Assembly: GCA_003427395.1 (NCBI GenBank)
Contig: BFEA01000039.1
Span: 3,190,844 to 3,254,843, forward strand
DNA length: 64,000 bases
Direction of reading: 5' to 3'
Source: Chara braunii
Lineage: Eukaryota; Plantae; Charophyceae
The position numbers and the translations under genes are program-made. Each line of letters opens with the position of its first letter. The first letter of the stretch is position 1. Of the stretch, positions 3,502 to 54,410 are shown piece after piece. A model generated the notes under the pieces. The model ran no database searches and was not told the origin of the DNA. It saw only the letters and a list, made by a program, of their open reading frames with translations.

Positions 3502-6500
3502 GTATGTGCCACCATTTTTCCTTTCAACCTGGAAACCATGTATGGATATGAGAGCTTGATATAGTGGCATCCGATCAGGTCATTGTAGCCACAGTCGTCG
3601 GCACTCATGCAGAGTGCATTGCATCTCTGATTGTGGTCATACGTATTTTGATGGCTGTTTGAACATGTCATTGCCATCAACTGGATGTGATAGCATGGTA
3701 GTGGTTGTATGTGGGCAACGGTCAACAAGTACTTGACAGAATCAGCATGCGATGGCAAATACTGGAGGTTCTTGAGTGTGCTGTGTTGTCTATATCTGTG
3801 CCTTGGTGACTTGGTGGAAGAACCGCGCGTATAGCATGCAATGGCAAATACTGGAGGTTCTTGAGTGCGCTGCGTTGTCTATATCTGTACCTTGGTGACT
3901 TGGTGGAAGAACCGCGCGTATAATTTCTTTATGTTAATGAACGCGACTGCTTTATATAAACAACTATCCATGAATATAGCAAGGCTCGAAGAGCAGACAC
4001 TTCACGTCTGAATCCCATGCATTGGAGACAAAGGATGCCTTACATCCACTTCACATACGATTTTGAAATTGACATAATGTCATGATAATGATGATTTCTT
4101 TACCTTAATGAACTTGACCACTTTATAGAAACAAGTATCCATGAATATAATAAGGCTCGAAGAGCAGAGACTTCGCGTCTTAATCCCATGCATTGGAGAG
4201 AAGGATGCATTATTTGAAATTGACATAATGAAGACTTCAAAATTAACATATTTCTTGTTCGTCATGATGAATGGTCAGGGTGTTGAGTACGAGCCTGCAT
4301 CGACAATGCAAAGGGGCATGGCCTGGGCTCTACAAGATCCTCAGGACGAAGAAGCCAAGGAAGAAGATGCCAGGGCGGAAACCCTTGTTCAAGCAGATGT
4401 GGATGTGACAGCAGAATGGATGGCAAGCACAGTCCCAGAAACCAGCATGGTGCTTTCATCCAATCCTTTTGCTGAGATGGATGAGAACGAAGGAAGGGAA
4501 GACGAGGAGGAGAGGCAAGTGTATGAGTTGTACGACAAGCCCATATTATTGCCAGAGCCGGGTACCCTTCCAGCAGAGTTGGCTGTGCCCTTGCCAAAGG
4601 TTGCAGACTCCAGAGAATCAGGACAGCCTGCTGAGGATCTGCCGGTGTCTGTTGGTGTCCTTGAAGAGCATTTGATGGTGTTGTCCGAGCCAACAGTCAA
4701 AGTGAGACCTTCCATGGAAACCGCAATGGCACCAAGTATTGTGGTAGGGACGTCTGAGCCTCTGAAAGAACCTGCAGTGAATGTGATTACCGAGGGTTCT
4801 CCTGAGGAGAGCAGAAAGCCTCCCGATCTTTCACTGGGGAGGACTGGACGGGCAGAGGCTACAGAAGAACCTACTGTGGTCTCCATGACTGTGTCTGAGA
4901 AGGAAAGTACCCTTGAGCCCGGCGTGCCTTCGCTAGTAGAGGCTGTCACTATTGGCGCTGCTGAGCCTGCGGTTGAGGTGGAAAGCGCCTCTGGAGCAGA
5001 CGCAAATGTTGAGGAGGATGATCTAACAAGAGTCGTAAAGCCTGCTCCTGCACCTGGAGTGACAGACGAAGCGGAAGTGGCTGTTGCTGCAGCAAGTATG
5101 ATCGAAGAGAAATTGGCAACTCCAAAGCTTATTTCGCAGTTGCAGAAACCATGGCAGTCTGCGGAACAACTTGAACCAGTTGCAGGGGTCGGTGAATATG
5201 GTAGGTACTCTAGCGCAGCATTTGATCCCTTGCCAGCGGATGGGCAGGAGACTGAAATGGTGGCATTGGAGGAGCTGCTTCCTGGAAAAGAATATCTCTA
5301 TGAAGGCAAGATCGAGCCTGGGGACATCAAACAGGGTTTCCTTGGCGACTGCTGGTTCCTTTCTGCTATTGCTGCTCTTGCGGAGTTTCCTGGGTTGGTG
5401 GAGAACGTGTTCCTGCATAGGGAGGTACCCAAAGATGGTGTATACAAGCTTCGTTTCTTCAAAAGTGGGAGGTAGGTGGTAGGTGCCCTATTATCTTTCC
5501 ATGTTTGGAGGGACTGTCTGTTTTCTTTCAACATCCAAGTTACGTTGCTTGCTGGGATGCGCTGTCGGCGCAGCAGCGCTCTTCACTTGTTGTTGCAGAT
5601 TGCGTGTGTTTCCCCTTTTCTTAGTGATCTCCTCCTCAACCAAGTTCCTTGTCTCTTTGTGAGTCTTTGCTGTTATGGATTCTTGACAGGTTTGGTCATC
5701 GAGTTGAGTAGAAGGGACGTTATGAGAGAGTGCTTCTTGTTGTATTGGATCACAAACTCTCTCTTTTTTCAAAGCTTATCCATGGCAGAGTGCTTGCTTT
5801 GTGTCGTATTGAATCCCAAACTCTCTCCTTTTTGAAGCTTATCCTCAGCTTGATTGCTGTTATGCTGTTTTGTAGGTGGGTCTCCGTGGCAGTCAATAGC
5901 AATGTCCCAAGCAAGGAGGGACAACCCATATATGGTGAGTGTAAACATTTTTGTGTGATAGCTGTTGATTTGTATCATTCGTGTTGAATGTTGAACATAC
6001 GAGAGGCCAGGATCTTTAAAAGAAAAAAATGATTAGACAGTTACCTTACCAGGTTTACTATGAATGATAACTTTTTTTTTTCCCTTCATTCTTGACATGG
6101 CCTCGGATCCATTCTATTCTTGGCAGCAGCAGTCCAGTTCCTTGTCCGACAGAAGTCGGAAGTTTACAAAAATATACACCCTTACTCATGGTCGGCTTAT
6201 GGCTGGGAACCTCGGACAACATCGTGTGCCCACAGAAAGAGAGGGGGGGGGGGGGGAGACTGGCTGATGGATACACCCATGTGGATTTGAAGGTCCCCTC
6301 CTGTCTAAGCTTCTCACCTGCCCAAAGAAAAATGCTTGGAGCTGCAGAATGGAGAGCTGCTCCTCTCGGCGTTCTATTGCAGGCTGTTTGGAAATCCTGT
6401 GAGAAACTAAAACACTCTCTGTAATTTTGGATACAATTTGAGAATTCTACAGCTAAATTCCAATTTGTTGAACCCTTCTGAAAAAACTTCAAAAAACTGG

Positions 6501-7945
6501 TTATAGTCAAAATACAAAATTGTTATTTCAAAGTTGTGCTTCACAATTTAAACCTAAAAACCCCTTGTCAAGTGATGTTTCTCCGTTTCGAAGTATTACT
6601 TGCGGGCGTTGATGCTATAATTTTGCTCTGTTCGAGTCTTCAAACAATTCTTACTGTGTCTTGTTGTGTAATCTGGTTGGCTTCCTGTTCTCAGCAAAGT
6701 CGGTTGGAAATGAGATGTGGGTGATGCTGTTGGAAAAAGCGTATGCAAAATTGCACGGGTCCTACAAGCAATTGGTTCTTGGCAATCCAAATGATGCTCT
6801 GCAAGACCTAACTGGCGCACCATGCTTATGGTATAAATTTGACACGGAGAAATTCAAGAAGCTTGAAGAAACAACTGGTACGTCCTGGGGTTCTTCAGTA
6901 ATGCCTCATGGTTTCTGCTCCTTTGAAGTGTGGGTTGGACCTTGTTGCAGTGGTGGCAGGCTGTCCATAGGAACAGGGGAGCTATAGACCTTAATAAAAA
7001 TGTTTTACACGGTTGAAAGCTGAAACATGTTTGGAAGATCTTCCTTCTCCTTGGCGTCTTCCCCCACCCTCCCCAGCCCGTCCTTTTTCCCTCTCCGTGG
7101 CTTTCGTGCAGCTATTTCCTTCTCGCCGCCCTCGCCCTTGCCCCCCCCTCCCACTTCCCGCCACCCACCCATGTTCCACCTGTAGCCTTGGTATCTTGTT
7201 TCAAATGTTCTTAGGCTCAATGCTTGATAAGTGGGGCAAAAACATCATCGATAAATGTTCCAGTGGACCAATGTCGATCAAATGGTTTCATAATATCATA
7301 TCTTGCAGATGTTTCTTGGACTGTGTTCAATGTTTGAAAAAAATCAAATGGTTTCATAATATCATATCTTGCATATGTTTCTTGGATTGTGTTCAATGTT
7401 TGAAAAATATGGTAAAAAAAAAGGATTGCGGAACGATTGTGTAATCACTCCAGGGGAGAGAACACCTAGGATTGCTACTGGCTAGTTAGTGGGTCTAGGC
7501 GGGGGCGGTGAATGGATTTGGGGGACCTTAGAAAATGTATCTTTGAAGATCTGAGTATTAGCTACAGCTTGTATTTATTAGTCATTTCATTTCAGTTGAA
7601 TAACTTGAATTCTTGGACCTTTCTTAACATGGAGCCTTTGTCCGTTTGCGGATACCTTTATCTGTGCAAACTTGCAAAGCTTTGGGGAATAGTTGGCAAT
7701 CCTGTTTTTTCTTTTTTGGGGGGGGGGTTAACCTCTGGTGGGGTTAGGAAGTGGTATTCATGGCCGTGTCAGTCCAAGGGGCGATGGGTATGATGTGGTT
7801 GGGGGGAGGAAAAGGGAGAGGGGGAAACGAGGAACAGATTGCACAGTGGAACGTGGAGATTGAGAGAGTGTGACACAACTATTTTACTTCAGGTGTAGTG
7901 GGAGAAAGGGTGGGAATTCGTTTCTGTTTGAGTGTGTGTGCGTGT

Positions 7946-8013
<68 letters not shown>

Positions 8014-11000
8014 ATCATTGTGTATGTATATGATGAAATTAGGGACCCCAACAGGGCACTTGTGCCAGTATGCGCTGTTGGTGTATTGTATGCAGCAGAA
8101 CACTTTCCTTGTTTTTGACTCTTCTGCTTTAGGAAACTCCATTTCTATCTGATTCTTGGTCACTGTATTTTGGTAGTGGTGACTATGGAGTTCCTGTCGT
8201 CCTTGAATTTTGGCGCATTGGCCTTATGAGTCATGACTCCTTTCTTTGCTATTGAATGCAGGTTTCTGGTCTCTCATGAAAGACTATGATGGACGTGGGT
8301 ATCTTATGGCGGCATGCACTGCTGGCAAAGACGAGTTCACGGAGAAGGGTGGGAAGAGTGGAAGTGGACTGGTCAATGGACATGCGTATACTGTTATCAA
8401 AGTGAGTGTGTTATCATTATGCAGGTGTGCTCATTGATTTGCGGTTTGGACTGTTTGATGTTCTTCCTGAAGTTGTGGTGGTGGTATTTGTCACTACTGT
8501 CAGTGAAAACAAGCCGTTGCTGTGCTGCAAATTCTCACCGATGCTGGCCTGCAAACAGATGAAAGGTCGGGCATATCAGATTGCAGCTATTCTGATCGAC
8601 AAAAGCATTGCACCAAATTCATTTTTGTGAGCACATCTGTTTTTTTTTATTTTGTGGTACTTTACCTGATACACTGGAACGCACCATACATCTTCTGTTG
8701 GAGGAAATGAGAATTAAAAATCACCAAAGTTCGGGGTCTGGAAGTCCTTTGTGTCCCGTTGGACCCCCTTGGGTCCGGTAGGCTGAACCTTTCTGCGGCC
8801 TCGTCATATACGGTGGCAAGTTCTTGTAGAAGGGTGCCGGCAGTGGTGGTTTAATAATATGCCCGTTGCGTGCCTCGTCACAATGTCTGTGAAATCAAGG
8901 TTTGGTGAATTTCAGCTCCGAGAATTTATTTTTTCTGAATGCAACTTTGTCATCTTGTGTGCCATGGATTGTCAAGCTTCACTTCTGTGGATTCAGTGTG
9001 CGAATGTTGAACTGTCTCGTTGTCAGCTTTCTTATCATTCCCATCTTGCAAGTATAAATGGCTTTGTGATTGACTTCCTGAATCGCCGTCCTGGGAACTT
9101 GGTGGGTTGTGGAGCAGGTGAGAGACTCACATGGACATCAGCTTGTGAACGTTCGAAATCCCTGGGGCAAGTTTGAGTGGGGTGGTGCATGGAGTGATAA
9201 CAGCAGAGAGTGGGAGCAGTATCCCGAGGTCAAGGCTGATTTGAATCCAGTGCTAGATGTGTCCGATGGCAGCTTCTGGATGGCATACCATGACTTCAAG
9301 CAGGTAGGCAGCCAGCTGTGGCAGGGTTTGGAAGTATATTTGACATTGCACAGAAGGGTTACCAGGCCTGAATATGTAAAAGAATGGTGTACGTGGCAAC
9401 GTGCTAAGGCAAGCAAAAGTATATTTTGCTGAGTGTTGGGCACAGGGCCGCACACATTGATCATTGGAATGTGTTAAAAAAGGATGGTGCACACTGATCG
9501 TTGGATTGTGTTTCAAAAAGGATGGTGGACATTGATGATTGAGTTGTGTTTCAAAAAGGGCGGTGCGCATTGATCGTTGGATTGTTTTTCAAAAAGGATG
9601 GCGCACATTGGTTATTGTTTTGGGCCTATGACATCCCTGGGGAAAATTTGAGCGGGGTGGTGCGCGGAGTGGTAAGAGCAGAGTGGAAAAAGTGTCCCGA
9701 GGTCAAGGCTGATTTGAATCCAGTGCTAGATTCTTGGATGGTTGCTTCTTGATGCCAGGAAATGACTTACAAAGTTCGAACTGGTGGCACCCAGATATGG
9801 TCGGGTTTGGAAGTATATTTCACATGCCACAGAAGGTCTACCAGCCATGAATATGTGAAATCAGCCATGAATATATCAAACCAACCATTGACAACGGTGG
9901 TGGATTGCTGGCTATCATTCTTATATGTAAGTAACAAGTATTGTATTCTCTATAACAATTAGATGAATAGAGCGGGAAAGTAGTTGAGCAGCATCCAGAG
10001 CATCAATTTAGCTCAATGGTTCATGCTTTGAGAGCATCAATTTAACACAGTGGGCGTGGCCATTATATAGCAGTTACACACATAGGTATCTTTCCGTTTA
10101 GGCTTGAAGACCACGAAGTTGCGCTAACCCTTATTGTCCATCCTGTTCCGCTCGGAGACTGCAGTACCTACTTCCCCCAAATATAATGTACGGTCATTTA
10201 GGACAAACAAAAAGAGAAGCTACGTCTGCAGTGCATCTGGACTGAAAGGTGAGCCAAATATGGCTACAATGACCGTATGCTCTATTTGGGGGAAGACGGT
10301 AGGCTGCACTACCTTCTCATATGTTCTCTCGAATGAGGTCTGAAAATTCGATTCCTCCCTGCTGTTGTTTGTTTTTTGTGAACTTGCTTCTCATTCATCA
10401 GTCTTTCGTTGGAATGGGAGTTTGCTGTGTGAGGCATGGCAACCGACAGCCATGGAACGAGGTGCACATTCCCTGCCAGTTTGACAACAGGGATATCTGT
10501 CGTACTGGGGACACTGCTCATCTTACAAGAATCTTCAAGCTGGAGGTGACAGAGCGTACACATGCATTTTTAGGGCTACATCAAGAAGACCCACGGCTGT
10601 AAGGAACTTGTCTAATCAAATACCTGAGGTCGCTGCGCTTACGTCCTTTCAGTTTGTCTTTGCTTCCCTTCTATGAAAGTACTGGAGCTCTGGTGAGCAA
10701 AGCTTTAAAGAATCGCAAATTTGTTTGCTTTGTATCTAATCTTTGGCAAATCATGTGCAGTGCAGTTTGAAATTTCCAGAGTATTGAGGGCCTTGCGGCA
10801 GAACTCATGAGGCGTGAAAATGGAGAGTGAATCTCTTATATAGAAAATGGCAATGTTCATAGTGGTGTATGTATCTTGCCGTCCGGCGAGTAGTGTGGTG
10901 AGGTCCTAAAGTAAATAGACTGTTGAAGATGTTTTTAGCAATGGCCCAGAGTTCATAATCTGGTATATGTACTCCTATGCCTCAACTGAGCACGAGCACT

Positions 11001-14000
11001 GTACCAAGTATGGCCGTGGTTTTGGACAACTAGAGTTCGTAGTGGTGGGCAGCACAGTGAGGCCCTAAAGTAAGTCTCCCCATCTGGCAGGTAGTATGGT
11101 GAGGTCCTAAACTTAATCGATGGTTCAAGATGGCATTATGCATAACAAGATCAGGGCGTGCTACAGATTTCAGACGGACGTTTGACCTCTTGTGGAACCA
11201 GTTCAAGCATACGCCTTCCCAACAGCTGTCAAGTATGTTGTGGTTACAGTCTATGTTGGCTACTGCATCAGCATTCTACTGCATCAGGAAACGATAGTCG
11301 GGCGCGAAAAAAAGACTTGTGGAAAAATGATGTTTGAACACTCACCGCCAAACTGGAAACAAAAGTCGCCCACCGGGGCCTGCGTGGCTGCTCCCCACAC
11401 GGGCCGTGGGCCCATTTCATACTTTCCCAACACTGTGAACGGGGGCTCACGCAGGACTCTCATGCGAGACCCTCTATTTCCTTCAGAGTATTAGAGATGG
11501 ACTCTGATGGAGTATGTATCTTGTCATCTGGCAAGTAGTATGATGAGCTCCTAAAGCCAATGGACTGTAGAAGTTGTGTACAGGAATGCCCCAGAGTGCA
11601 AAATCTGGTATATGGGCTTCAATGCCTCAACTGACCATAAACATGCTACCAAGTGGATCTCGCTGGCGGACAACTATACGGAAGAATGGTTACTACTGGT
11701 CTGCTGGACCGTATCAGATTATTGTGCTGATTCCCGGTGATTGCTGTGCTTAGTGTGTTATGTTTTTCATTTGTGTGATGTGCTGGTTGCTTTGTTTAGT
11801 GTGTTCTGCTTTTTATGTCTGCTGTGCCCTATATGATGAATCTGCTGTTTGCTGCTGTCAATGTGATTTATCTGACAGCTGCTGTATCTTAGTGGTGGTT
11901 GCTGTATTGTATCTGAGGAACGTGCTTGTTTGTCTGTGCGTCTGTCAGCCTGGGTGCTCCAACACCATTGAAGATCGGTTTTTATCTCGTCAATGAGAAG
12001 AAGGTACTTACCGCAAAGAAGCACACACGCAGCGCCAGATGCCAGCTTGAGGTCATGTTGGAACCAGGTTTCTATAGTGTGGTGGTGAAGGGGTTGTCCT
12101 TTACTGGTAAAAATGGGGAGGAGTGCAGTTTTCCGGACAGCACAGGAGAAGTTTTGCCTCGAAGGTTTGTGTTTACGGTACATTCAGATAATCCAGTAAC
12201 TGCCGAGCTGGAGGGCGAGGTTATCATGGATTCTCCCGGCAAGGAGTTGATTGAAAAAATTACAGAGCTTCCAACTGAGCCAGCGGAAGATGACCTCCTC
12301 AAAGTCTGGCATCTGGACCAGGTGGTTGCTCCAGCTGGCGAGCCTGATTTCCTACCATGCTCATCAAAGAGAGCTGCAGAGTTGCTGCCTGAGCCACAGG
12401 TCCACCCTGTGGGCATGTCTGAAAACTGGGATGTATGGAGGGACATAGATGGAACCATTGAGCCTGGCACTGTGCCATTATCTTTAACTTCTGTGGTATC
12501 TGAAGCCAGTGCATTGGCAGAGATCCTGAAGGAACCGGTTGCTGATGTCCCTATCGTTCCTACAGCTCCAGTGCTTCCGCTGGTTGCAGAGGTGGTTGTC
12601 CTGGTATCGGAGGGCACAAAAGAGCAGCATACAGCACCACATTCTGAAATATCAGCTTTCGGTGAAGAAACTAAGGAGCCGCTTGTACAGCTGTTTTGGC
12701 CACACGATAAGGAAGCTGTCATTGAGCCATCACCATGGCCGGTCACTTCCCCTCTGGCAGAACGGGGGGGGGAGCCTGCTCTGGATCTTTCAGTAGCAGC
12801 TTATACAGAAGGTGAACCACCTGCGATCATTGGTGGGAAGATCATGACTGTTCTAACGGGTGAAGGCGAGCCCACAGAAGATGGCATGGATGCCACAGAG
12901 AAGTCAGAGGCTCAAAACCGAGCACAGAGAGCAGAGGCTGAAGAAGCTGGGTTTGTAGCAGCAATGGGTCTGGATGAAGAGCAGCGTGGTAGACTCTATA
13001 GGAGCGCTCCCTGGTTTGCAGCAGAAGCACTGTTCCCGTCCAAGGAGGTGATAGAGTATGGATCCCTAGCGGACCCTTCATATGAGCCCTTGTTGCTACC
13101 TCAACACCAAGTGGAGATGGTGCCAGCTTCCAGGATTGCAGGTGCCAATTTACAGTACTTGTATTCTGACATCAAACCATCAGATATTAGGCAGGGGATC
13201 CTGGAAGACTCCTGGTTCCTGTCTGCAGTTGGTATTCTCGCAGAGTTCCCTGGCTTGATAGAAAGAGTGTTTGTCCAACGGGAAGTGCCTTCCAATGGGA
13301 TATTCCGGCTGCGCTTCTTCAAGAGTGGGAGGTAATGAACCCTTGAACTTGACAACCTTGCTTTGTACCAATCATACCTGTTCTACTTGAGCTCGTTGCG
13401 CTGGATTTAGGTTTGGAGCGGGCTGATGGAGACCCGTTTTTGTGAAGTGCAGAATTTATAGGGAAGAGGTTACTGTGAGATCTGACCGATGTTCTCTTTC
13501 TCTCAGGGGTTTTGTGTCATCTCTTTCGCTCTTAGATTTGATGTGATTGCTCATTTCTGCACATTCCTCTGTATTTACGTTGATTACTGACGCGACCTAT
13601 TTGAGGTGTGATTTCTGAACCGGAGGGGTGCAGATTCTCCAAGGGTTCAACTTTCTGAGTGCCTCACTGTAATTTTTACTGAGTAGTTCTTATTTTTGCC
13701 ATGCAGATACGTTACCGTTGCAGTGAGCAGCAAGCTACCGGCCAAGGATGGGCGTCTGGTCTATGGTGCGTTTTCCTGTGCATCCCAAAGCGATATTATT
13801 GTGAACTAGGCAGCTCCCCTGCAATCACCAATGACAGCCTCTGTTGTAAATCTTAAACATATGTCACAACCCTCGTTGCTGTGGACATGTCTGTTCGGAT
13901 GAAAGAAGCCATCTTCCCTCGAATATCAGACTTCCTGTTCATCAATGCATGCAAGCTCCTTTGCAGTGGGTACAGTCATGATGGTAGCCCGATCGGATGC

Positions 14001-14736: not shown

Positions 14737-14796
<60 letters not shown>

Positions 14797-17949: not shown

Positions 17950-18031
<82 letters not shown>

Positions 18032-19184: not shown

Positions 19185-19256
<72 letters not shown>

Positions 19257-43200: not shown

Positions 43201-46200
43201 CGTTTGATAGATTGAGAAATGATGCCGTAATTTAAAGCAGTGTCTCATTACTCTTGAATGGTGTGGATGCATGTTGTTGTTGGCTCGATGAGCAGGTGAA
43301 GGAGTTGTATGGTCACCGATTGGTCCATGTGCGGAATACATGGGGGAAGTTCAAGTGGACAGGAGCCTGGTCAAACAGTAGCAGCGAGTGGCGAAGGCAC
43401 CCACAAGTTATGGAAGAACTGCAGCCAATGTTAGATGGGTCTGATGGGAGTTTTTGGATTGGCTATAGTGATTTCCTGAAGGTATGCTAGAATTTTCGTT
43501 TTTGAAGTTTTATCCCGTATTTGGAAAAACTGAAACTGTTTTGAATCTTTTGAATCTTTTGATACATGTAGCTTCGAACTAGCGTGTCATTTTATAACTG
43601 TTCCTTTCATCTCTTGAGCAGCACGGACAGCTTTTGGTCAAGAAGTCTCACAAAAGTAATTTTGATTTACTGCTACAAGTCACGATGTGTGTCAGGCAGG
43701 AGTAGACCACCCAATTTACTGTCTTTGCTGTGCTGGTTATTCTGATTCCAAGGTGTTTTCTTGTGTGGCAGAAATTTGCGGGTGTTGCGATCTGCTACCT
43801 ACAGAGGGATGGGAAAAAGCCATGGAAAGTTCTGCAGATGGGGTGCTCGTTTGTTGCGGATGACTGGTCTGCTGCTGGCAATGATACTCAGCCAACGCGT
43901 GTCTTCAGACTGAAGGTGCAAGAGCGAACGCATCTGTTTGCAGGACTACATCAGGAGAGCCCGAGAATGTAAGTGTTGCAACGAGCTCGGTTTACTCCCA
44001 AACAGATGTCACCAAAGTTTTAAATGAGGAAAAGAAAAGCAGACTGGTCCTTCGGGTCCTGGCTCCTTTCCCAACCGAATACTTTTCCCGATTTTTTATT
44101 TTTTTTTAATACAGAAAACAAGCCAATTTATTACTAATATTGTAATACACAAGCAAGGGGCCGGCCACCCCACATAAAGACCGGGTCTGGGACCATTACC
44201 CAGCATTATGCTTTTGACAGGACCCTGCAGGCTCTGGGAGAATACCATGCCAAGCCTGTCACCATTAACCATCCAATTTGTTTTTCTGTCGAGTCTCCCA
44301 CCAACTCAGCCTACATCGCGTGGCCTCTTTGCTGCGCCCTCTTCTGCCTCAGCGATGCAGTTGTCTGGCTGTTCCTCTGCCGACGGTCATCCCCATGCCA
44401 CATGGCACTTCCCCCAGGAGACCCTGCGGGGGGGGGCCGGGGGGGGGTTGAAGGCCCACCGTGGTCAGGCGGTGTCTTCCTCGGTCACATGGCCGATTCC
44501 GAGTCCTGCCATCCATGCCCCGTCAGGAGGGGCCCTACTCCAGGACTGCAAGGTCCGTGTCCCCCATGCCACATGGCACTTCCCCCAGGAGACCCTGCGG
44601 GGGGGGGGCGGGGGGGGGTTGCAGGCCCACCGTGGTCAGGCGGTGTCTTCCTCGGTCACATGGCCGATTCCGAGTCCTGCCATCCATGCCCCGTCAGGAG
44701 AGGCCCTACTCCGGAACCGCAAGGTCCGTGTCCCGTGCCTGCTGCCCACCCTGACAACCCAACCGTCGGAGGCAGAGCTTGTTCCCCACCAATCTACCTA
44801 TCCTTTCCCTCCACCAACAACTAGACGGAAAATTCCTTCCGAGTCTGCTATGATTTGTCTGGGTGTCGTTGCCTCGCACTGCACCACAGTCTAATACTCT
44901 GCTTCGAGTGAGGCTAATGGCTGGTCCCATGCTTGTTGCGCTAAGGGCTATGGTGCTGTACTGCGCTTGGTGAGTACAGCCCAATCCGCTGATTTTTATT
45001 AGTTTTCTTTTTCCCGTCGGTGAAGCGATCGTCACTGGCAGGTCTGGCGGATGTTAGGATTTGTCTCCACTTGGGAGGGAGACTGTCTGCAACCAGCTGG
45101 AAGTTCCCCCTGGATTATTGAAGCCTTTTATCTTTTTCTGAATTTCTATTGGTTTGCGCCCACCTCCCAAAAGGTGACCTAAATGCCAAAACCCCTTTCT
45201 CGACCCAATGTCCCCATATGGCATCTTCCTTGGTTAGAGAGGATGGTTTGTCCTTCTCGTTGACAACCCATTTGTTGCCAAGGACAGTGTGTTTTAGAAT
45301 TCATGATTTCCATACTTCCGTTGTGGTCTGTGACGGACCTTCGGGAAAATCCTTCTTCAGCCTTGTATCAGGTTTACCCAAAAGTTGACCTCCCTGTGAG
45401 CAGGGAGAAGATGAGGATCTCATAAGGCCATCGGGGACTGAAGATCCAATCAGAGGTGAAGCGGAGGGGACTAGTTTTGAGCACCAGACCTAGGATCCAT
45501 TTGATCTGCCGCCCTTGTGATTTTTTTTGTTATGGAACTCCACCCTCCATTCTTGATAAACAGCTGTCTTGAGGGGGACCACCAGTCCACAGATAGGCTG
45601 TGATTTTCTTTTTAAGTCCTGTGATGTCTGGCATTTCCTGGGATACCACAGGCTTTTGCAACTTCCCAAGAGATATACTTACTGAGGACTCGTTCACACC
45701 ATAGGTTTTGCTAGGACTTCTCAACCCTGGGGCTGTGTGGTATACACATGTATCCTGATGGAATCAGAAGAACACAATGGGGTTAGGGGCTACCCCTCCG
45801 ACAAAGGTTCATCATTCTCCGGACCATGCGAGATGGTCACCTATCTTACGGCTCTCTATTCTGCTTGCTTCGTAGGTTACCCCTCCGACCAAAGGTTCGT
45901 CATTCTCCGGACCGTGCGAGATAGCCACCCACCGTATGGCTCTCTATTGTACTTGCTTTGTAGTTCCCAGTCTTCGAGTGAGTGCGTTGAGTGAGAGGGC
46001 GAAGCAAATAAGAGAAAAAGGTTGTGCGCACATAGGATCACGTATACAGACGATTTATTTTTCTAATTAATTTCACCCGATTACGGAATACATACATATG
46101 CGACCTTTCTGTTGTTGAGTCCAACATGAAAAGAAATGAAAATGGTATGTTGGCCTTTCTGTTGTTGAGTCCAACATGAAAAGAAATGAAAATGGTATGT

Positions 46201-49200
46201 TGGCCTCTGTTGCAATTTGTTTGTAATTCTGCGTGTCATCATGATCTGTGCAAATCAAGACGTCACGTTACTGTGACTGCGCTGCTGTCACTCTGCTGTG
46301 TAGAAACTGGACAAGGGCAATGCTTGCTTGTAGTGAGGTAAGGGAGAACTGTGGCCGGGCGGAGGCTAACTTCTCATATGCTCTGTTGTTCTGTTGATTT
46401 GCTCGTTTGTTGATGTTATCGGTTGTTCACAGGCTTGGAGCACCAGAACCATTCAAGGTTGGAATCTGGGTGATGGATAAACAGAATCGGTATCTGGCAA
46501 CGAAGCAAACGCAGGATGCGACGTGTCAGGTCGATTGCGTGCTCGAGCCCGGTTTGTATCGGGTAATGGTGAAGGCTTTCTCATTCACAGGCAAGGATGG
46601 AGAGCAATGCAAGTTCCCCGATCCGGAGGGTAATGTCCTGCCAAGACGGTTTGTTCTGATGGTTCACTCGGAAAAGCCAGTTGCTGCGAAACTCTTAGCA
46701 GAGGCACCGACTGATATTGTGAAGTCTGTGAAAGAGCGTGACGTGATAATCTCATCACAGCCGGCGGCAGATATCCGCCGATTGCTGAATTCGGAGCCTG
46801 GAAAGCAAGCTGTGCACTCGCTTACTCCTCATAGAGAAGAACCAGTGGCACCGATCATTTACTGTACAGATGTAGCTGCTGCAATTGCCCAGCGAAAGTC
46901 TTTGGCGGAATGTACAGCAGAGCCTCCACAACCAGTTGTGCGAGTAGTCAGGCATCCTCTTGCAGACTCTATCATGGTGGCACCATTCCATGGACCGGTA
47001 TTTGAGATAGGAGAGGAGCCCAAGGAGATGGAGACGGAGGTGCCGATTGTTGAATCGTCTTATCCAGAACCTGTCGCATATGACAAGGTCAGTGAGGAGG
47101 AGACTGCTAATGTAGGAACCAGTGCCACTCCTGGGAAGGTTGTGGAGGTGGAAGGCAAATGTGAGCCTCAGCATGATGTAGCCAAGGAGGTATGCCCGGT
47201 GCTCGAGCCTGTGGAAAGGTCCACGGAGGGCAAACCTGATGTGGAACCACTAGAGCCCGTTGAGAGTCTGGTACAGAGTGAATCTGCTCTGGATAGTATT
47301 GGTCCCGCTCACACTGAGAGTGCTGTGACAAGCGATTCTTTGCTGAATGCTGTTGATGCGGTTTCCGTCGAGACCTCCGAACATCCTGCCGAAGCCGTCA
47401 CGCCAGTCGAGGGTGCAGCATCTGATGAACATCCTGAATATCTTGAGCCCGTCAGCAGTATTGCACGTGAACAGTTAGGTGAAGATGATACAGAAGCTGA
47501 CGCTCGCTCAACAGTAGAAAGTGAGCATGATTCCCCAGTCTCCGAAAGGGAACAGCTTGATATTGTCTGGGGATCAGAACCTGGAACGCCAGTTCGTCCT
47601 CAGACTACTCTGGAAGAGCAAGTGAAGAAATCTGTAACATCTGAGTCTCCCCCACCCGTAAGAGAAGCGGGTGATGGCAGCTTTGTGGAGGTACCGCCAG
47701 AAGAAAAGCGGAGCCCATATGGTACTCCCAAGGCTCAGGAGGTGGCAGAGGTTGTCCCATCTCAGGGGCAAGCATCAGAACCACTACTGCTGGCAGCGGG
47801 AAAACCGAGGGAGGGTGCTGAAGGAGAACAACCTCTGGAGTCCACTGCGTCAGCTGTCGCGGAATCGTCAAACGCACGAGCTGCTCCATCTGAGGCAAAT
47901 GGTTTTGAAGAGGTCGATGTAGAGGAACCAAAGCAGGCAGGTGCCATGGTCACAAACACTTCCATAGAGGGTCAAGAGGAGGAACTTCTCGCAAAATCGC
48001 TAGGGATCGCAGAGGAGAACCTTCCAGATCTGTGGAAGTCTGTGCCGTGGCAGGCGGTGGAGACTATTACACCAGCGAAGGGTCTGGAGGCCTTTGGTAT
48101 GATAGCTGATCCAGAGTACCAACCAAGTCCTGTTCCTCGGCATGGGGCACAGATGGTCCCTGCAGAACGGCTGCTCTCCAACCCAAGTCTGTTCTCTGGC
48201 AAACTTGATCCATCCCACATTAAACAAGGCATGTTGGCTGATCTATGGTTCCTCTCAGCAGTGGCAGCACTTGCGGAATTCCCGGTGTTGCTGCACAATG
48301 TCTTCGTGCAGAATGAGATGTCAGATGATGGTGTGTACAGACTGAGATTCTTCAAAAGTGGAAGGTACGGAGAATGATGAACACAGCCTTCTCCATTGTA
48401 CTCATAATTTACCCTTCGTGTCCTATAGGGGAAAGGCTATAGCATGAAGGTATCCTGCTTAAAGCTTTGATATTTTGCTGCAAACAAGTGAACTTCATCT
48501 CAACTTTTTTGCAACCTCACAAGGATTTGTCTCTGCGCTAGCTAGGTGGAGTGGTTAGAGGCTGAGCGATCTGATTGGTATTGCGTACTCTGTAGTCATG
48601 GGATGGTGAATATTCGATTGTGTGCACTTCCAAGATGGTTATTAGAACGTCATCCGTCATCCCGTGATCCTCAATGTCAGAGGATATGCCTTGGCATGCA
48701 GATGGCCATCGATCGGAACTCGTTCGGAAATTCGGAAATTGCCATTTGGCACAGAATACATGTTGACCTAGGCACCGTTAGGGACATCCGTAAAAATCGG
48801 ATCGATGCAGAGAAGATTAGCATGGCCCAAAAAAGAGATGGGGAAAAAAAAAAAAACACTTCGACCCAGGCTTGTTATGAATTGCTGCACTCGCTCAGGT
48901 TCAGCGATGACATGTTACAGCCATGCTGGACCATTTTTCGGACATGGTGGACATGCTCGAGACATGCTCGAGACATGCTGGACCGGATTTCGGGACTTAG
49001 TTCCAACTGCGTCCATCCATGAACTGCTCGAGACATGCTCGAGACATGGTGGACCGGATTTCGGGACTTAGTTGCAACTGCGTCCAGCCATGAACTAGGT
49101 TTCTGAGTGACAAGTAATGGTCCATTGACCTCAGTTGTACTCTGTGTTGTATGCCTCTCTTTTTGTTCATCTGTTACTCACGTTGGCTGCGAATCTAGGA

Positions 49201-52200
49201 TAATATTAAGACGAGCATTAAGTTTCAACAACGCCGGATCTCTGGGATGAAAATATTGAATCGACAACTTTTGGAACAGATTGACGCAGTGGACTCCGGA
49301 GGTTGTTCTCCTTCAGCACCCTCCCTTTGAAGCAACAGAGTTTTCCTTAGCTGGCAAAGATAATTCGAAGAAAATAACTTTTGTTCGGGTTCGGAACCAG
49401 AGTTCGTCGAAATTTTCTTCGAATTATCTTTGCCAGCTAAGGAAAACTCTGTTCTTCGATAATAGTTGATATTGCAATGAAAATGAAAACTGCTAACAGA
49501 GTTTTCCTTAGCTGGCAAAGAGAATTCGAAGAAAATTTTGGATTCCTTTTGTTCGGAACCAGAGTCGGTAATACATTTTACAACTTTTACTGAAACTCCC
49601 ATATTTACCATCTCTGTGAAATTGTGTGAATGGCTCTCATACGTGTGTACTATGTAGTCATTCAAAACAAGTGTGGTCTTTCAGGGGGTGCGAAATTGTG
49701 AATGCCTTTTTTTTTTTTTTTTTTTTTTTCCAACAGTATCAGTGCCATTTCATGTTTGTTTAACTCTGCTCTTTTTGGCACTGTTGCTTGTGTTTGTCAT
49801 GACGTCTCTTCGATGCTCAGGTTGGTCCAGATAGCAGTCGACACGAAGGTTCCTGCCAAGGATTTCCGGCCGGTTTATGGTAAGTATGCCCAGGTCCGGG
49901 AGCAGCTGAATCCCGAAACTCTCTCTATCTATTATTTCTGTTTCCGTTTTGTGGTTGCTAATTTTAGGTTCCTTCCTCAATCTTCCTTCTTTTTTTTTAA
50001 TCCCTTTTAAGACGGCAAGCCTGGCTCAATTGGTACACCCGTGAACTGGACTGCTGTAACACAGACCTGATTCGAACTCCCATAGAATTTCGATCAGTAG
50101 AAATTAACGCTGAATTTACATGAGGACGGACAGTTCAAAGATGATCTCTTGAGGACATTGCCCCCTTATTTAAAATAAGGGAAGTGAGGGGAAGGAAGAG
50201 ACGAAGAAGGAAGCTACGCTACCAACCTGGAAAAGAATGATGGTGTTAACTTGTGAACAAAAAAAAAAGAACTGGACAACTCCACCTCCGGGACAAAGTG
50301 GAAGTCTTTGCCAAATTTAAAATATGAAATTGATTTTTTTTTTAATTCAGTTTTGGAACGGCCGGGCAATTGCTCCTGGGCCACTCCGGTAATGTAGGAA
50401 GGAAGAGAAAAAAAAAAAAGAAAAAAAAAAAGAAAGAAAAAGAGTGCCAGCCTCAAGAATTCATTGTGGAAGGTGCCGCTTGGTCTGTTTATGGTTAGTA
50501 TATGCCGATGTGTGGGAGCAGCTGAATCCCCGGAACTCTCTTCTCTATTTATTCTTTTTTTTTCCCCCTTCTGCAGTCGCTTTACGTCTCTTTCTCACAG
50601 CCACGTCTTGTTGCTGTTTTGCTGTTTTAGATCGTCAGCTGATGGAAGATAAATTGTTTTTCGTTTTTCAATTCTTTTGGTGTTTATGCAGCTTACTCGT
50701 CAGCAAACGAACTCTGGGTGATGTTGATGGAGAAGGCTTATGCTAAGCTGCATGGATCATATGAAGCTCTTATTGGAGGATCTCCCAGTGATGTGCTGCA
50801 AGACCTTACAGGAGCCCCGTGCATAACATATGCCTTCACGAGCACAAAATTCCAACGATTTGAGTCAACAGGAGGTTAGTTACATTCACTATCATCCGGA
50901 AACACTTTCCTCCGGTGGCATATTTGAAGACTAGGAGCCTGGCTTCACACTCGCCCTGACCGCTAGTAACCTTTGCGTTCACACTCGCCCAGACCCCGAG
51001 GGACTCGTGCCTCCATGCTTGCCCTGCCCACTGATCTGGTCATAACTTTGTCATGTGCTCGCTGATGACCTGACCTCCATTGAGTCCATTCATTTCACAC
51101 AGGAAAAAATACCAAAAGCACAGATGCTAAATAGGATGGCGCAGCATGAACTGAACTCCATGTATGGGAGGAGGGGCATGGGAATGTAGTCATTGCACAG
51201 ATTGCCCAGCAGCAACCCTAACCAGCCTTACCAAGTCAACAGCCAAGATAAGAGATGTATATGAAAAGATGCAAGGCGCAACTCCGTCTCCTGACGTCAT
51301 CTTTCATTTTCGGATGATTTTCCCCATTTTTTTTATGTCTGTGTAATGGACATCTTCTGTTTTGGCCCATGCTTGCTTCTTTTGCGACTCTACCTTCGAC
51401 TCTCTCTGGAGTAGTCTTCCATCTTAGGTAAGTTGACTTCTGCCCTCCATCCCCTTATGGGGTTTGAAATATATATGATGTCGATTAGGAATTCCTTGCA
51501 AGTTTTTCACTCCTCGAATACAATGGTATTTTTTACCAGCAGGCAAATCTTTGACTCTACCTACCTCCTCGAACCATAACAATAGAGTGCTCTTGTAAAT
51601 TATGGCCTTCTCCTGGAATGTATGCAATAATATACATATGTATAAGTGCAAGTGTGCCACTTTGGCGGCAGACGGGTGTGTGGGCATTCGGCGCTGAACC
51701 ACACAAACGTGGCCAACCCTTTTTTTTTTTTTTTTTTTTTCCTATTATATGGCTTATCTATACTTTTTCGTTAAGGGATGGCTTGTGATGATTTGTGAAG
51801 GGAATGAAAGAGAGAATCTGGGGTCTTTTAAAACAACGGACAGGTTGGTTTAGTATTCAAAATTACAAGAAAGAGTATATGATAGCTATAACACCATCCA
51901 AGCAAATTAGTAAAGATTGGAAAGTCTTGCCACACACTGAAGCTCCGTTCTCTGGCCTCGTCGTGATTGTTAATTAGCATGAAGCTCTTTGTCGTCTGTC
52001 CCTCAGCATGAAGCTCTTTGTCATCTGTCCCTCTCTCTCACATAGACCTGGGGGAGATCTGGAGGAGAGAATTAGATAGTGGATTGGACATGAAGGTGAG
52101 AGGTATGACCTTGCTGTATTTGGAGTCGATGTTCCTACAGTATTAGAAGATTGTGGTATGTAAAACCATGAGACTTGAAGTCCGACGGTCCAATATTAGA

Positions 52201-53473
52201 TTAAAGCCCCTAGGCGGGACTCTTATCTCTATGTCGGTAGAATGAAATCTGCGCAAGTGTGGAAGCAGTGTTCCTGCCACTGGGTGGGATTGTTATTCTA
52301 AGTATTGATATTGATCTATGTGGCCCTACTTCCCCTTCCATTGTTTGTTTGGGTTCCGCTATTGAATGCAGGATTCTGGACTTTGTTGAAGGGATATTGC
52401 GACAGGGGTTTCATTTTGACAGCATGTGCTGCCGGGGCAGATGAGTGTGAGGAGAATGGAGTGAAGAGGGAGGGAGCCCTAGTGAATTCACATGCATTTG
52501 CCGTCACATCGGTGAGTCCGTTTTTCAGAACAACGTGCTTGTTCTCCTTTTTTTTTCTCACTTTTCTTCCAAAGACATTAGGTACCCCTTAATCTGATTG
52601 TATCCGTCTGAATTTGGGCTCGTTGTCAGTTATACAATAGTAACCATTCAGCGAAAGGGCCGGTACAGGGACCAGTGTACATTTCCTTTTCAAATTCCTT
52701 TCTAGACGGCTTTGAGATATTATCATTGAACTGGCGGGCCCCAGGTAAGCCACAACTATTATATTCTGTTCTTCTGATTCTGATTGCATCTGGATTCGAA
52801 CTTGGGTCCGTGTTTCAACAGCTGACGGGTGTACGAACTGAGCTAGGCCCTTCGGTAAGACAAATGTAGTGTGTAGTATGAACCTTATTCGGGACAAAAA
52901 ATTAAAAACACAATTTGCCTTTTATTGTGAGAGAGCGTCAGCACAATGAAGCTGAATGCAACCACTTCTTTCCTTAGTTTTCAACTTCTTTGTAACTTTT
53001 TAGTATTTACCAATTGTTCTTCCGGTTCTCCTCGCTCTGTCGCAAGTGGATGTTGCATTTTAAAACTTCTGTGTGTGTTTGCTTCGTTTGCACAGAACGT
53101 CATCTGCAAAGCAGATGGTGTCACAATCTCAGGTTCGCTGTGTAAGGGTTCTGGTCCTGGCCGTTTCTGTTGGAACAGGCCCAAGTGATAAAGTGATGCT
53201 GCCACTTTTCAGTGTTTAGATTAACCCCTCCCAAACTGAACAGACAAACTGAAAAACCCACCCAGACTCCCAGAGTGAGTTTTGTAAGAGAATGGTTTTG
53301 CTGCAGTTTTTGCCTGGCAGTGTGCTGTGTGTGAACTCGGGCTTTTTTTGGTTCGGAACTTTGGGTCATATGTAGTTTCGGTTTCGTTATGGACCTAGCA
53401 GAAGACTTTTGAAAGTAGGGGCTCTTTTGCAGCGGTAATGTCAGTCTGATTTGGTGGAGGGAAAAAGAGACAC

Positions 53474-53519
<46 letters not shown>

Positions 53520-54410
53520 TGTATGAGAAAGAATTCCGTGAGGGAAATGGCATAATTTTGGGTCTGAACCTGTGCTTTCGGCTGGATGATTCTTGCAGCT
53601 GAGGGAACTTGAAAGAGGAGTGCACCGCTTGCTGCATGTGAGGGACCCAAGGAACAGCTTCAAATGGACTGGTGCCTGGTCACATAGAAGTGCAAACTGG
53701 ACAAAATATCCACATGTCACTAAGGAAATCAAACCGATACTTGATGGGTCGGATCATGGTTTCTGGATCTCCTATGAGGATCTTCTAAAGGTGAGTTGGC
53801 TTCTTCTTTTTGTATCTTTGTGTGCATTGGAATTGTGTGTGTCCATCTGTGTGCATTGGAATTTGAATTGCAAGCACTGTTACCAGACCTTTTGCAAATC
53901 GTCACGGCTTCTTCATTCTTACCACGCCTTGACAGATCGTCAGGACATGGACGCGTATAAGTATGGTTCCAGTTTTGATTCATTGTTATGGATAAGGGAG
54001 GAATGAAAAAGTTGGCTCTCTGGTTGAAGAGGAGCAAGATTGTTGGAACAAGATTGCTGCCTCTGCGGATTGGGAAGGAGGTGGGACCATGAGGCCCTGT
54101 TTTCGGAAAAGGGAAAGAGAAGAGAGAACAGAGTGATATGCTTACTGACAAAACAAATTTGAGTAGTTGGTTGTCTGAAAATTGGTCGGTACTATAAACC
54201 TTGGTGCTCCTTTGTGACTGCACATGGAGTGTTGGTCAGTGCTATAGACCTCGGTCCTCCTTTGCAACTGCGCATGGAGTCAAACTGGTGTCCTTGGTCA
54301 TAAAAACCAAGCATCGTAACCACTGCCACCATGACACGGTGTACAAAAGCCGAACCAAACAGGTTATGATATTCCCCCCAGCCTTCCATGGCCGCAGTGT
54401 CATTACCATG

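What the first reader, a model, noticed from the sequence alone, without database searches (positions are those of the whole stretch)
5350..53660. One intact protease followed by four differently inactivated pseudo-proteases
Seen: the triads are module 1 C/H/N, module 2 S/H/D, module 3 G/Q/Y, module 4 G/C/N and module 5 L/H/D. All five keep the oxyanion Gln (QG) and core motifs such as [11 protein letters not shown], DLTGxP and WxGAWS, with no frameshift or stop. Known: catalytically dead calpain-like domains act as structural or cytoskeletal proteins in trypanosomatids and in androglobin. Inference: modules 2-5 are selected for fold and binding (scaffold, substrate trap or cis-regulator of module 1). 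Module 1 might process the chain.
Basis: partly seen in the sequence, partly recalled or inferred. Interest (0 to 1): 0.9.

Follow-up and report, generated by a model that had tools for sequence, protein, structure and literature searches.

The report
Giant five-module calpain, four modules dead
A stonewort alga (Chara) makes one huge transcript for a protein carrying five calpain protease units in a row, of which only the first keeps its cutting residues, while the other four have been kept intact in shape by natural selection, so they probably act as binding or scaffold parts rather than as enzymes.

Summary
On the + strand, 32 exons with canonical GT-AG introns (1075-57033) join into one frame of at least 4,728 aa. 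It holds an acidic N-terminal region, five CysPc + C2-like modules separated by 250-450 aa E/P/V/A-rich linkers, and a sixth C2-like domain.

A 14,647-nt transcript contig and stranded RNA reads show junctions 1D-1E-1F-2A-2B exactly as modelled. This joins the intact module to a dead one, and the M2 Ser codon is unchanged in cDNA.

The dead modules are not decaying:
- Modules are 49-57% identical with almost no indels while dS is saturated (dN/dS at most about 0.15).
- The linkers have lost all similarity to one another.
- An old Chara braunii paralogue (CBR_g38075) keeps L/H/D in module 5, with dN 0.19 against 0.69 in the adjacent linker.

New detail: M2 also keeps all five Ca2+-ligand side chains, like a laboratory C-to-S trap mutant. 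M3-M5 have lost three of the five.

The genome is Chara; at least two further paralogues exist. Scaffold, trap or self-processing roles remain untested. Multi-CysPc and dead calpains are both known, so this is a new variant of a known kind. This scan also noted the stretch as s1-565553.

The parts
1075..3501 (+). Upstream coding exon (809 codons). Acidic A/E/V/S-rich region, net charge -114. The true first exon and start codon lie further upstream and were not found.
   Evidence: Open frame with acceptor AG at 1073-1074 and donor GT at 3502. No Pfam hit. The X1 contig holds about 160 nt more 5' sequence.
4279..5471 (+). Exon 1A: linker plus the start of CysPc module 1. Holds oxyanion Gln 5332-5334 and catalytic Cys TGC 5350-5352.
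   Evidence: Phase-0 acceptor at 4278. Peptidase_C2 hit, E = 9e-12. Codons.
5876..5934 (+). Exon 1B
   Evidence: GT-AG and frame.
6695..6877 (+). Exon 1C ([17 protein letters not shown])
   Evidence: Peptidase_C2 hit, E = 5e-15. Its 3' end is the loose end of the X1 and X5 contigs.
8262..8401 (+). Exon 1D, His CAT 8381-8383
   Evidence: RNA joint 8401->9118. Pfam E = 4.5e-4.
9118..9303 (+). Exon 1E, Asn AAT 9157-9159, Trp 9163-9165
   Evidence: RNA joints. Peptidase_C2 hit, E = 4.5e-17.
10402..10598 (+). Exon 1F: end of CysPc and first half of the C2-like domain of module 1
   Evidence: RNA joints 9303->10402 and 10598->11949.
11949..13331 (+). Exon 2A: second half of C2-like 1, linker, start of CysPc 2. 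Ser TCC 13210-13212 at the Cys position.
   Evidence: X1 and X5 contigs and reads; 0 mismatches in X1. Peptidase_C2 hit.
13707..13765 (+). Exon 2B
   Evidence: RNA joint 13331->13707.
17262..17447 (+). Exon 2C
   Evidence: Its first bases are the loose end after 13766 in X1 and X5. Pfam hit.
17755..17891 (+). Exon 2D, His 17871-17873
19995..20180 (+). Exon 2E, Asp GAC 20034-20036 at the Asn position
20542..20738 (+). Exon 2F
22636..23994 (+). Exon 3A, Gly GGA 23870-23872 at the Cys position
24616..24674 (+). Exon 3B
25441..25623 (+). Exon 3C
32289..32410 (+). Exon 3D, Gln CAA 32390-32392 at the His position
32774..32959 (+). Exon 3E, Tyr TAT 32813-32815 at the Asn position
35173..35369 (+). 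Exon 3F
35838..37184 (+). Exon 4A, Gly GGG 37063-37065 at the Cys position
37865..37923 (+). Exon 4B
39808..39990 (+). Exon 4C
42545..42675 (+). Exon 4D, Cys TGT 42655-42657 at the His position
43296..43481 (+). Exon 4E, Asn AAT 43335-43337 retained
43772..43968 (+). Exon 4F
   Evidence: 71% identical to the paralogue's exon at L002:12359-12553.
46433..48364 (+). Exon 5A: longest linker, then Leu CTA 48243-48245 at the Cys position
   Evidence: All its sampled words are held by 19 public runs of the organism.
49821..49879 (+). Exon 5B
50692..50874 (+). Exon 5C
52372..52511 (+). Exon 5D, His 52491-52493
53599..53790 (+). Exon 5E, Asp GAC 53644-53646 at the Asn position
55171..55367 (+). Exon 5F. 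A truncated near-identical decoy copy lies at 55005-55109.
56292..57033 (+). Last exon: second half of C2-like 5, a complete intron-less sixth C2-like domain, and the stop at 57031-57033
   Evidence: 58% identical to Chara braunii GBG83417.1.

Best explanation
This is one real, expressed gene of the stonewort Chara (very probably C. braunii). It encodes a cytosolic 'poly-calpain' of at least 4,728 aa.

Architecture: a strongly acidic, probably disordered N-terminal region; five CysPc + C2-like (calpain domain III type) modules joined by acidic E/P/V/A-rich linkers; and an extra terminal C2-like domain.

Origin: the five modules arose by old internal tandem duplication of a small single-module green-algal calpain. 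The whole multi-module gene was duplicated later. Module 1 is sister to modules 2-5.

Shown here:
- Only module 1 keeps Cys/His/Asn.
- Modules 2-5 lack the Cys nucleophile but have been kept under purifying selection as folded domains.
- Modules 1 and 2 lie on one mRNA.

Inferred, not shown: module 1 is the only protease. Modules 2-5 work as non-catalytic binding or scaffold units strung on flexible acidic spacers. M2, which keeps His, the oxyanion Gln and all Ca2+ ligands, would act as a Ca2+-responsive substrate-trap-like binder. M3-M5, which have lost most Ca2+ ligands, would act as Ca2+-independent binders. This would parallel CAPN6 and the trypanosome cytoskeletal calpain-like proteins.
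For: Gene model and family:
- All junctions are GT-AG and in frame, with one stop.
- Every module hits Peptidase_C2.

RNA:
- A 14,647-nt contig in run X1 (depth 27.8) is spliced exactly as exons 1D|1E|1F|2A|2B with 0 mismatches.
- Its flanking loose ends are exon 1C and exon 2C.
- Its length equals the 14,187-nt model CDS plus about 460 nt of UTR.
- Stranded raw reads (X21, X22) and X5 contigs show the same joints.

Selection:
- Modules are 49-57% identical over about 450 aa with few indels; dN is 0.35-0.45 and dS is above 2.5 or not computable.
- The linkers have no significant mutual similarity.
- Against the paralogue at L002, the pooled M5 and dIII exons have dN 0.19 and the linker 0.685.
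- The paralogue's M5 keeps L/H/D.
- Dead modules keep 54-59 of 75 family-conserved columns, against 64 for M1.

Tree:
- The Chara modules form a clade (support 100/99).
- Its sister is a Cymbomonas calpain, whose transcript is single-module.
- Root-to-tip lengths are 0.52 for M1 and 0.85-1.13 for M2-M5.

Fold: an AF2 model of the paralogue's M5 (pLDDT 82) matches m-calpain over about 490 columns, domain III included, and the CAPN7 C2-like domain.

Ca2+ ligands (ligand list from PMC4057710): M1 and M2 keep 5 of 5; M3, M4 and M5 keep 2 of 5.
Against: - No activity, binding or localisation data exist, so the division of labour is inference.
- Only four of the 31 junctions were checked with reads; read laying allowed one call of 6,000 bases.
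- The rest of the model rests on splice signals, frame, paralogy and the X1 contig's length.
- With dS saturated, dN/dS is only an upper bound. For M2-M4 it does not separate the time before loss of the Cys from the time after; only M5 has a post-loss comparison.
- The 5' end of the gene is not resolved.
- The fold evidence comes from a paralogue's M5, not from the window's own modules. Joined exons were not handed to the fold tool.
Confidence: 0.6

Rival explanations
1. Module 2 is not dead. Its Ser/His/Asp arrangement works as a serine-type hydrolase, so the protein has two catalytic modules with different chemistry and three dead ones.
For: - M2 keeps His, an acidic residue at the Asn position, the oxyanion Gln and all five Ca2+-ligand side chains.
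- It keeps 58 of 75 conserved columns.
[quoted passage not shown] An Asp at the third position is therefore tolerated in this family.
Against: - Cys-to-Ser calpain cores are deposited in the PDB as mutants (for example 6BDT, the calpain-3 C129S core, listed). From general knowledge, C-to-S calpains are used as inactive traps.
- The Trp after the Asn is Phe in M2.
- M2 groups with the other dead modules.
Confidence: 0.12
2. Polyprotein. Module 1, or another protease, cuts the acidic linkers, so the gene delivers one active calpain plus four free pseudo-calpains in fixed 1:1:1:1:1 amounts.
For: - The linkers are long, acidic and poor in aromatic residues, so probably disordered and accessible.
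- One mRNA carries the modules.
- Autolysis is common in calpains (general knowledge).
Against: - There is no evidence about the protein's size.
- No conserved motif was found in the linkers that could serve as a cleavage site.
- Giant uncleaved calpain-like proteins exist, for example ClpGM6 (PMC4121973).
Confidence: 0.15
3. Purely structural or elastic giant protein. Even module 1 is not used as a protease, and the folded modules serve as attachment points along PEVK-like acidic springs, or as a Ca2+ buffer.
For: - The linkers are E/P/V/A-rich with net charges from -9 to -57, and the upstream exon has -114.
- Four of the five modules are dead.
- The analogy is ClpGM6, a cytoskeletal calpain-like protein (PMC4121973).
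Against: M1 keeps the triad, the Gln, the Trp and all Ca2+ ligands, and has the shortest branch. That points to selection on catalysis.
Confidence: 0.1
4. Modules 2-5 are decaying remnants of tandem duplication, drifting neutrally (a gene that is partly a pseudogene).
For: Loss of catalytic residues, each module in a different way.
Against: - There are no stops or frameshifts in about 11.9 kb of CDS.
- dS is saturated while aa identity is 49-57%.
- The linkers, duplicated with the modules, have lost all similarity.
- M5's state is conserved in an old paralogue.
- The gene is transcribed and correctly spliced.
Confidence: 0.03

Closest known systems
Calpains with several CysPc domains in unicellular eukaryotes (Zhao et al. 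2012, BMC Evol Biol, PMC3563603; architecture types 2, 9, 10 and 12, labelled '1st, 2nd and 3rd' CysPc)
   Same: More than one CysPc in one polypeptide. Partial or complete loss of active-site residues is frequent in protist calpains.
   Different: - Here there are five CysPc, each with its own C2-like domain and a long acidic spacer, plus a sixth C2-like domain.
- The organism is a streptophyte alga.
- The pattern is ordered: one intact module followed by four dead ones.
[quoted passage not shown]
Trypanosomatid giant calpain-like cytoskeletal proteins (T. brucei ClpGM6, PMC4121973; T. cruzi H49, PMC3214072)
   Same: A very large protein with several calpain-like domains that lack the triad, separated by long non-globular sequence. 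Their function is structural (flagellum attachment zone).
   Different: - ClpGM6 has no intact module, and its spacer is at least 55 near-identical 68-aa repeats.
- Here the spacers are non-repetitive and one module is triad-intact.
- No close kinship: the Chara modules are sister to a green-algal calpain.
- The localisation of the Chara protein is unknown.
CAPN6 (vertebrate non-proteolytic calpain, Cys replaced by Lys; cited in PMC3563603)
   Same: A CysPc-C2L protein that lost the nucleophile and is kept for a non-proteolytic role (microtubule stabilisation).
   Different: CAPN6 is a single-module protein and a separate gene from its active paralogue. Here the dead and live modules are fused in cis.
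Small CysPc + C2-like calpain of the prasinophyte Cymbomonas tetramitiformis (KAK3238052.1; transcript L004), and protist 'calpain-15'-labelled proteins of about 789 aa (e.g. Stentor SteCoe_26816)
   Same: - Cymbomonas is the closest sequence relative: sister in the tree with 100/99 support and 43% identity to M1.
- It has the same C2-like domain with the GLHQED and LPR.F motifs.
- The protist proteins are 35-42% identical.
   Different: These are single-module and have an intact C/H/N triad (Cymbomonas). They have no long acidic linkers.
Laboratory Cys-to-Ser calpain cores (e.g. PDB 6BDT, calpain-3 C129S)
   Same: M2 has the same single change at the nucleophile, with His, the oxyanion Gln and the Ca2+ ligands kept.
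   Different: M2 is a natural variant and also carries Asn->Asp and Trp->Phe changes. Its activity is untested.

Membership tests
Calpain family (MEROPS C2 / Pfam PF00648 Peptidase_C2) | Homologous CysPc domain | tested here: met
   All five modules hit PF00648 exon by exon. E-values run from 4.5e-17 to 1.5e-7 for exons A, C and E. Exon D is weaker or gives no hit.
Calpain family (MEROPS C2 / Pfam PF00648 Peptidase_C2) | Catalytic triad Cys/His/Asn plus the oxyanion Gln | tested here: met
   Met for module 1 only (C, H, N, Q). Not met for modules 2-5 (S/H/D, G/Q/Y, G/C/N, L/H/D), which are pseudo-protease members.
Calpain family (MEROPS C2 / Pfam PF00648 Peptidase_C2) | Two-lobed protease-core fold | tested here: inconclusive
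   The AF2 model of the paralogue's M5 (P0006:763-1222, pLDDT 82) matches calpain cores with Foldseek E = 1e-21 to 1e-28.
Calpain family (MEROPS C2 / Pfam PF00648 Peptidase_C2) | Ca2+ ligands of the protease core (CAPN1 D106, E185, E302, D309, D331; PMC4057710 Table 3) | tested here: met
   By alignment columns: M1 DEEDD and M2 DEEDD are met; M3 DRESS, M4 DYKND and M5 HEKHD are not met. E333 is not conserved in this clade. Ca2+ binding itself was not tested.
CysPc-C2L (CBSW) calpain architecture | Calpain domain III type beta-sandwich after CysPc | tested here: inconclusive
   There is no Pfam Calpain_III hit and no PDB sequence hit. The paralogue model aligns to m-calpain over about 490 columns, beyond the core of about 300, and to the CAPN7 C2-like domain 2QFE (E = 3.4e-5).
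Classical calpains (CAPN1/2 type) | C-terminal penta-EF-hand domain | tested here: not met
   No EF-hand or PEF Pfam hit in any exon. The protein ends with a C2-like domain.
Calpain-15 / SOL subfamily | N-terminal Zn fingers (PF00641) and a SOL-type C-terminal domain | tested here: not met
   No zinc-finger hit. Relatives labelled calpain-15 are only 30-42% identical.
DEK1 (the plant membrane-anchored calpain) | Multi-spanning membrane domain plus linker before a single CysPc-C2L | tested here: not met
   The sequence upstream of module 1 is acidic and low in complexity, with no Pfam hit. A DEK1 protein scores far below the protist calpains (P0041). The extreme 5' end was not seen.
Multi-CysPc calpains (Zhao et al. 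2012) | Two or more CysPc domains in one polypeptide | tested here: met
   Five CysPc lie in one reading frame. The M1-M2 junction is present in RNA.
Kinetoplastid cytoskeletal calpain-like proteins (ClpGM6/H49) | Cytoskeletal localisation and a structural role | not testable with these tools
   This is an analogy of architecture only. The tree places the Chara modules with green-algal calpains.

The most novel reading that the evidence does not exclude
The protein is a Ca2+-graded giant tether of Chara's giant cells. One live calpain (M1) is held in cis next to a natural Cys-to-Ser 'substrate trap' (M2) that still senses Ca2+, and next to three Ca2+-blind pseudo-calpains that anchor the chain to fixed partners. 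All are spaced by acidic springs. A Ca2+ spike would then switch capture (M2) and cutting (M1) of the same targets at defined positions. A whole family of such proteins, including an annotated 8,938-residue model, would be a stonewort innovation.
Probability: 0.12. Interest if true: 0.75.

Novelty: new variant of a known kind. Interest (0 to 1): 0.5.

Why it matters
Pseudo-enzymes are usually studied as separate genes. Here one live protease domain and four differently disabled copies are fixed in one chain. Selection has kept them for longer than synonymous sites can record, and the gene has at least two old paralogues.

That gives a natural series in one protein: an intact module, a Ser-substituted module with its Ca2+ sites kept, and three modules without triad or most Ca2+ ligands. 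The series can be used to ask what a calpain fold does when it no longer cuts.

It also shows that a streptophyte alga close to land plants, which keep only DEK1, expanded cytosolic calpains into giant multi-module proteins. The current Chara braunii annotation splits or mis-fuses these genes: CBR_g38075 is chimeric with a retro-element, and CBR_g37131 is only a tail.

Tried and rejected
Searches that found nothing or little:
- The search for homologous proteins with exon 2A (253-805 aa range) found nothing.
- The same tool with the tail exon found only P0001.
- With P0006 it found only P0002 from Chara; all other hits were generic calpains at 42% identity or less. Because of the length window, none of these blanks says anything about longer models.
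- The search of protein representatives with the tail exon gave only 5 hits in 1.84 billion proteins. Two were Chara and one Cymbomonas; the other two (P0003, P0005) are unrelated repeat proteins.
- The metagenome scan with P0006:763-1222 found no relative.
- The look-up of encoding contigs had no record for P0002.
- Pfam gave no hit for the C2-like exons, the linkers, the upstream exon or the intronic ORFs.
- The PDB sequence search with the tail exon gave only chance hits.

Methods that failed or were limited:
- Maximum-likelihood dN/dS on the long paralogue alignments timed out, and YN00 failed on saturated data. NG86 values are reported, and dS is treated as saturated.
- I could not reach modules 1-4 of the paralogues. 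The 10-kb flanks of L001 and L002 end in introns, and the 8,938-residue neighbour model could not be fetched.

Full report
**What is there**

The window is eukaryotic DNA with canonical introns. All-against-all comparison of stop-free + strand segments showed a six-exon unit repeated five times. I placed the boundaries by hand from the five-fold alignment. Every intron is GT..AG, and the phases are the same in all five units.

The joined exons give one frame with a single stop at 57031-57033. Upstream, the 1054-3564 open frame is another exon (1075-3501). It joins in phase 0 to 4279. The product is therefore at least 4,728 aa, and its start codon lies further 5' and was not found.

Exon by exon, all five units hit Pfam PF00648 Peptidase_C2. 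No other Pfam family hits the C2-like parts, the linkers or the upstream exon.

**The observation**

Codons at the catalytic positions give M1 C/H/N, M2 S/H/D, M3 G/Q/Y, M4 G/C/N and M5 L/H/D. The oxyanion Gln and the motifs EK[AG][12 protein letters not shown][AV]P and WxGAWS are present in all five modules.

**Organism and relatives**

An exhaustive profile-free search with the last exon found only five proteins in 1.84 billion. Two are Chara braunii models: GBG83417.1 (CBR_g37131) and GBG63456.1/GBG63455.1 (CBR_g38075). One is a Cymbomonas tetramitiformis calpain.

Their loci (L001, L002; assembly GCA_003427395.1, which papers cite as the Chara braunii assembly) hold the 3' parts of two paralogues. 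These are about 57-80% identical in protein, with saturated synonymous sites. The window shares intronic repeat families with L002 at 80-95% nucleotide identity. Earlier follow-ups of this scan on other pieces of the same genome also call it Chara. So the window is Chara, very probably C. braunii, and the gene belongs to a family of at least three.

The model next to CBR_g37131 is listed with 8,938 residues. I could not fetch it.

**Expression**

One read-laying run was allowed, with 6,000 bases, and I used 8200-14199.
- A contig of 14,647 nt in run X1 (depth 27.8) is spliced 8401|9118, 9303|10402, 10598|11949 and 13331|13707, with no mismatch.
- Its overhangs are the end of exon 1C and the start of exon 2C.
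- X5 contigs and stranded raw reads (X21, X22) show the same joints. Reads whose first mate lies on the - strand dominate, as expected for a + strand RNA in a dUTP-type library.
- Position 4023 of the contig lies at exon 1D, and the model has 3,862 nt upstream of that exon. The contig length equals the 14,187-nt CDS plus about 160 nt of 5' and about 300 nt of 3' sequence.

So the intact module and at least the first dead module are on one mRNA, and the length fits all five. The M1 His and Asn codons and the M2 Ser codon are read unchanged in cDNA.

**Are the dead modules under selection?**

- The modules align over about 450 residues with only a handful of short indels and are 49-57% identical.
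- Between modules dN is 0.35-0.45. dS is above 2.5 or not computable, so dN/dS is at most about 0.15.
- The linkers, which must have been duplicated with the modules, have no significant similarity left.
- Between the window and the paralogue L002, the M5 exons have dN 0.12-0.26 (pooled 0.19 over 448 codons). The linker in the same exon has dN 0.685.
- The paralogue's M5 has the same L/H/D. The inactivation is therefore older than the gene duplication, and the module has been conserved since.
- Of 75 columns conserved in at least 85% of 32 outgroup calpains, M1 keeps 64 and M2-M5 keep 54-59. The losses cluster at the His/Asn/Trp motifs.
- In an ML tree (18 rows: the five modules, the paralogue's M5, P0007 and 11 of the hits; all other hits left out) the Chara modules form a clade (100/99).
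- That clade is sister to the Cymbomonas calpain. M1 is sister to M2-M5 (92/93). Path lengths from the Chara node are 0.52 for M1 and 0.85-1.13 for the dead modules.
- The Cymbomonas-type transcript L004 has in-frame stops before and after one CysPc-C2L, so it is single-module.

Limits: with saturated dS the ratio is only a bound. Only M5 has a comparison that certainly post-dates the loss of the Cys.

**Fold**

Mean pLDDT was 82.

Foldseek puts m-calpain first (3BOW, 1KFU; about 490 aligned columns, that is the core plus domain III). The protease cores of calpains 1, 3, 5, 8 and 9 follow. The CAPN7 C2-like domain 2QFE matches separately. The unit is therefore CysPc plus a calpain-type beta-sandwich, although Pfam Calpain_III does not see it.

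**Ca2+ sites**

The ligands of the CAPN1 core are D106 and E185 (site 1) and E302, D309, D331 and E333 (site 2), from PMC4057710 Table 3. I mapped them through the HMMER alignment to m-calpain and the family alignment.

| Module | D106 | E185 | E302 | D309 | D331 |
|---|---|---|---|---|---|
| M1 | D | E | E | D | D |
| M2 | D | E | E | D | D |
| M3 | D | R | E | S | S |
| M4 | D | Y | K | N | D |
| M5 | H | E | K | H | D |

E333 is not conserved in this clade, even in intact relatives. So M2 differs from M1 essentially by C->S, N->D and W->F, whereas M3-M5 have lost the triad and most Ca2+ ligands.

**Linkers**

The linkers are 253-448 aa long, with E at 11-16% and P, V and A at about 10% each. 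Aromatic residues plus Cys make up about 3%, against 13% in the modules. Net charges run from -9 to -57, and the upstream exon has -114.

**Mechanism**

Shown: one gene; one mRNA across M1-M2; one triad-intact module; four triad-less modules conserved as folded domains; graded loss of Ca2+ ligands.

Inferred: M1 is the protease and M2-M5 are non-catalytic binders spaced by flexible acidic chains. M2 would be the most enzyme-like, behaving as a trap. Rival readings are scored in their own sections: M2 as a serine hydrolase, a polyprotein cut in the linkers, a purely structural protein, and neutral decay.

**Comparison with what is known**

- Calpains with several CysPc domains, and frequent loss of active-site residues in protists, are on record (PMC3563603).
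- Giant cytoskeletal calpain-like proteins without a triad are known in trypanosomes (ClpGM6, PMC4121973).
- Charophytes are said to keep cytosolic calpains that land plants lost (PMC10762896).
- Full-text searches found no description of this Chara protein or of a 1 live + 4 dead arrangement.

I therefore rate it a new variant of a known kind, with moderate interest. This scan had already noted the same stretch as a poly-calpain (s1-565553) and had noted the intron-less sixth C2-like domain (s1-565663).

Noticed in passing
window 54960-55125 versus 55126-55291: A 166-bp tandem duplication copies the acceptor and the first ~85 nt of exon 5F. The first ~130 columns differ by only a few mismatches. 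The upstream copy (exon-like 55005-55109) runs into a stop, so it is a decoy acceptor. Which one is spliced was not checked with reads.
   Followed up: partly
window 9334-10261 (intron 1E-1F): This intronic stretch is covered by RNA at a depth equal to or above that of the exons (X5 contig of 928 nt, X21 and X22 reads). There are loose ends at 10232 and two variant letters (10261 T>C, 10267 C>T) in reads of the opposite orientation. It holds a 38-bp tandem array at 9453-9617. It is probably a repeat or a separate transcript.
   Followed up: partly
L001:1-1196 (Chara braunii BFEA01000438.1, reversed): The gene model that ends here, in an exon-5E-like piece, is listed with 8,938 residues. That is about twice the window's protein, so it may be a paralogue with many more modules or a fused model. 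It could not be fetched.
   Followed up: no
L001:11389-11856 and 12671-12973: In this paralogue the sixth C2-like domain is split by an intron of about 800 bp. In the window it is intron-less (56292-57033).
   Followed up: partly
L002 (Chara braunii BFEA01000039.1:3447579-3505192): The annotated model CBR_g38075 starts with a retro-element integrase-like part (weak PF24626) fused to calpain exons, so it is a chimeric annotation. An exon like the first half of the tail lies between exons 5D and 5E (33076-33582). The locus has 6,571 N, which suggests a rearrangement or an assembly error.
   Followed up: partly
window 29357-30037 (- strand), intron 3C-3D: A 226-aa ORF that, from memory, resembles the C-terminal part of plant LINE reverse transcriptases. 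It has no Pfam hit. Single N letters lie nearby (27850, 30871-30907).
   Followed up: partly
window 3694-4215 (intron between the upstream exon and exon 1A): Two pairs of direct repeats of roughly 100-180 bp. In the first pair the copies begin near 3745 and 3835. In the second pair the copies begin near 3920 and 4100, and the second copy runs into the ORF that the ORF listing starts at 4141. As a result the first ~50 codons of that ORF are intron, not coding sequence.
   Followed up: partly
window 14358-14981: Long purine/pyrimidine-biased low-complexity DNA with a (GA)n/(CT)n microsatellite in intron 2B-2C. A similar (CT)n run follows exon 2D (about 17950-18030).
   Followed up: no
alignment of 32 outgroup calpains: 7 of the 32 closest non-Chara relatives lack the Cys at the catalytic-Cys column: at least 6 carry another residue there (F 3, Y 2, G 1). 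These are protist proteins of about 789 aa labelled calpain-15. Dead members appear common in this whole clade.
   Followed up: no
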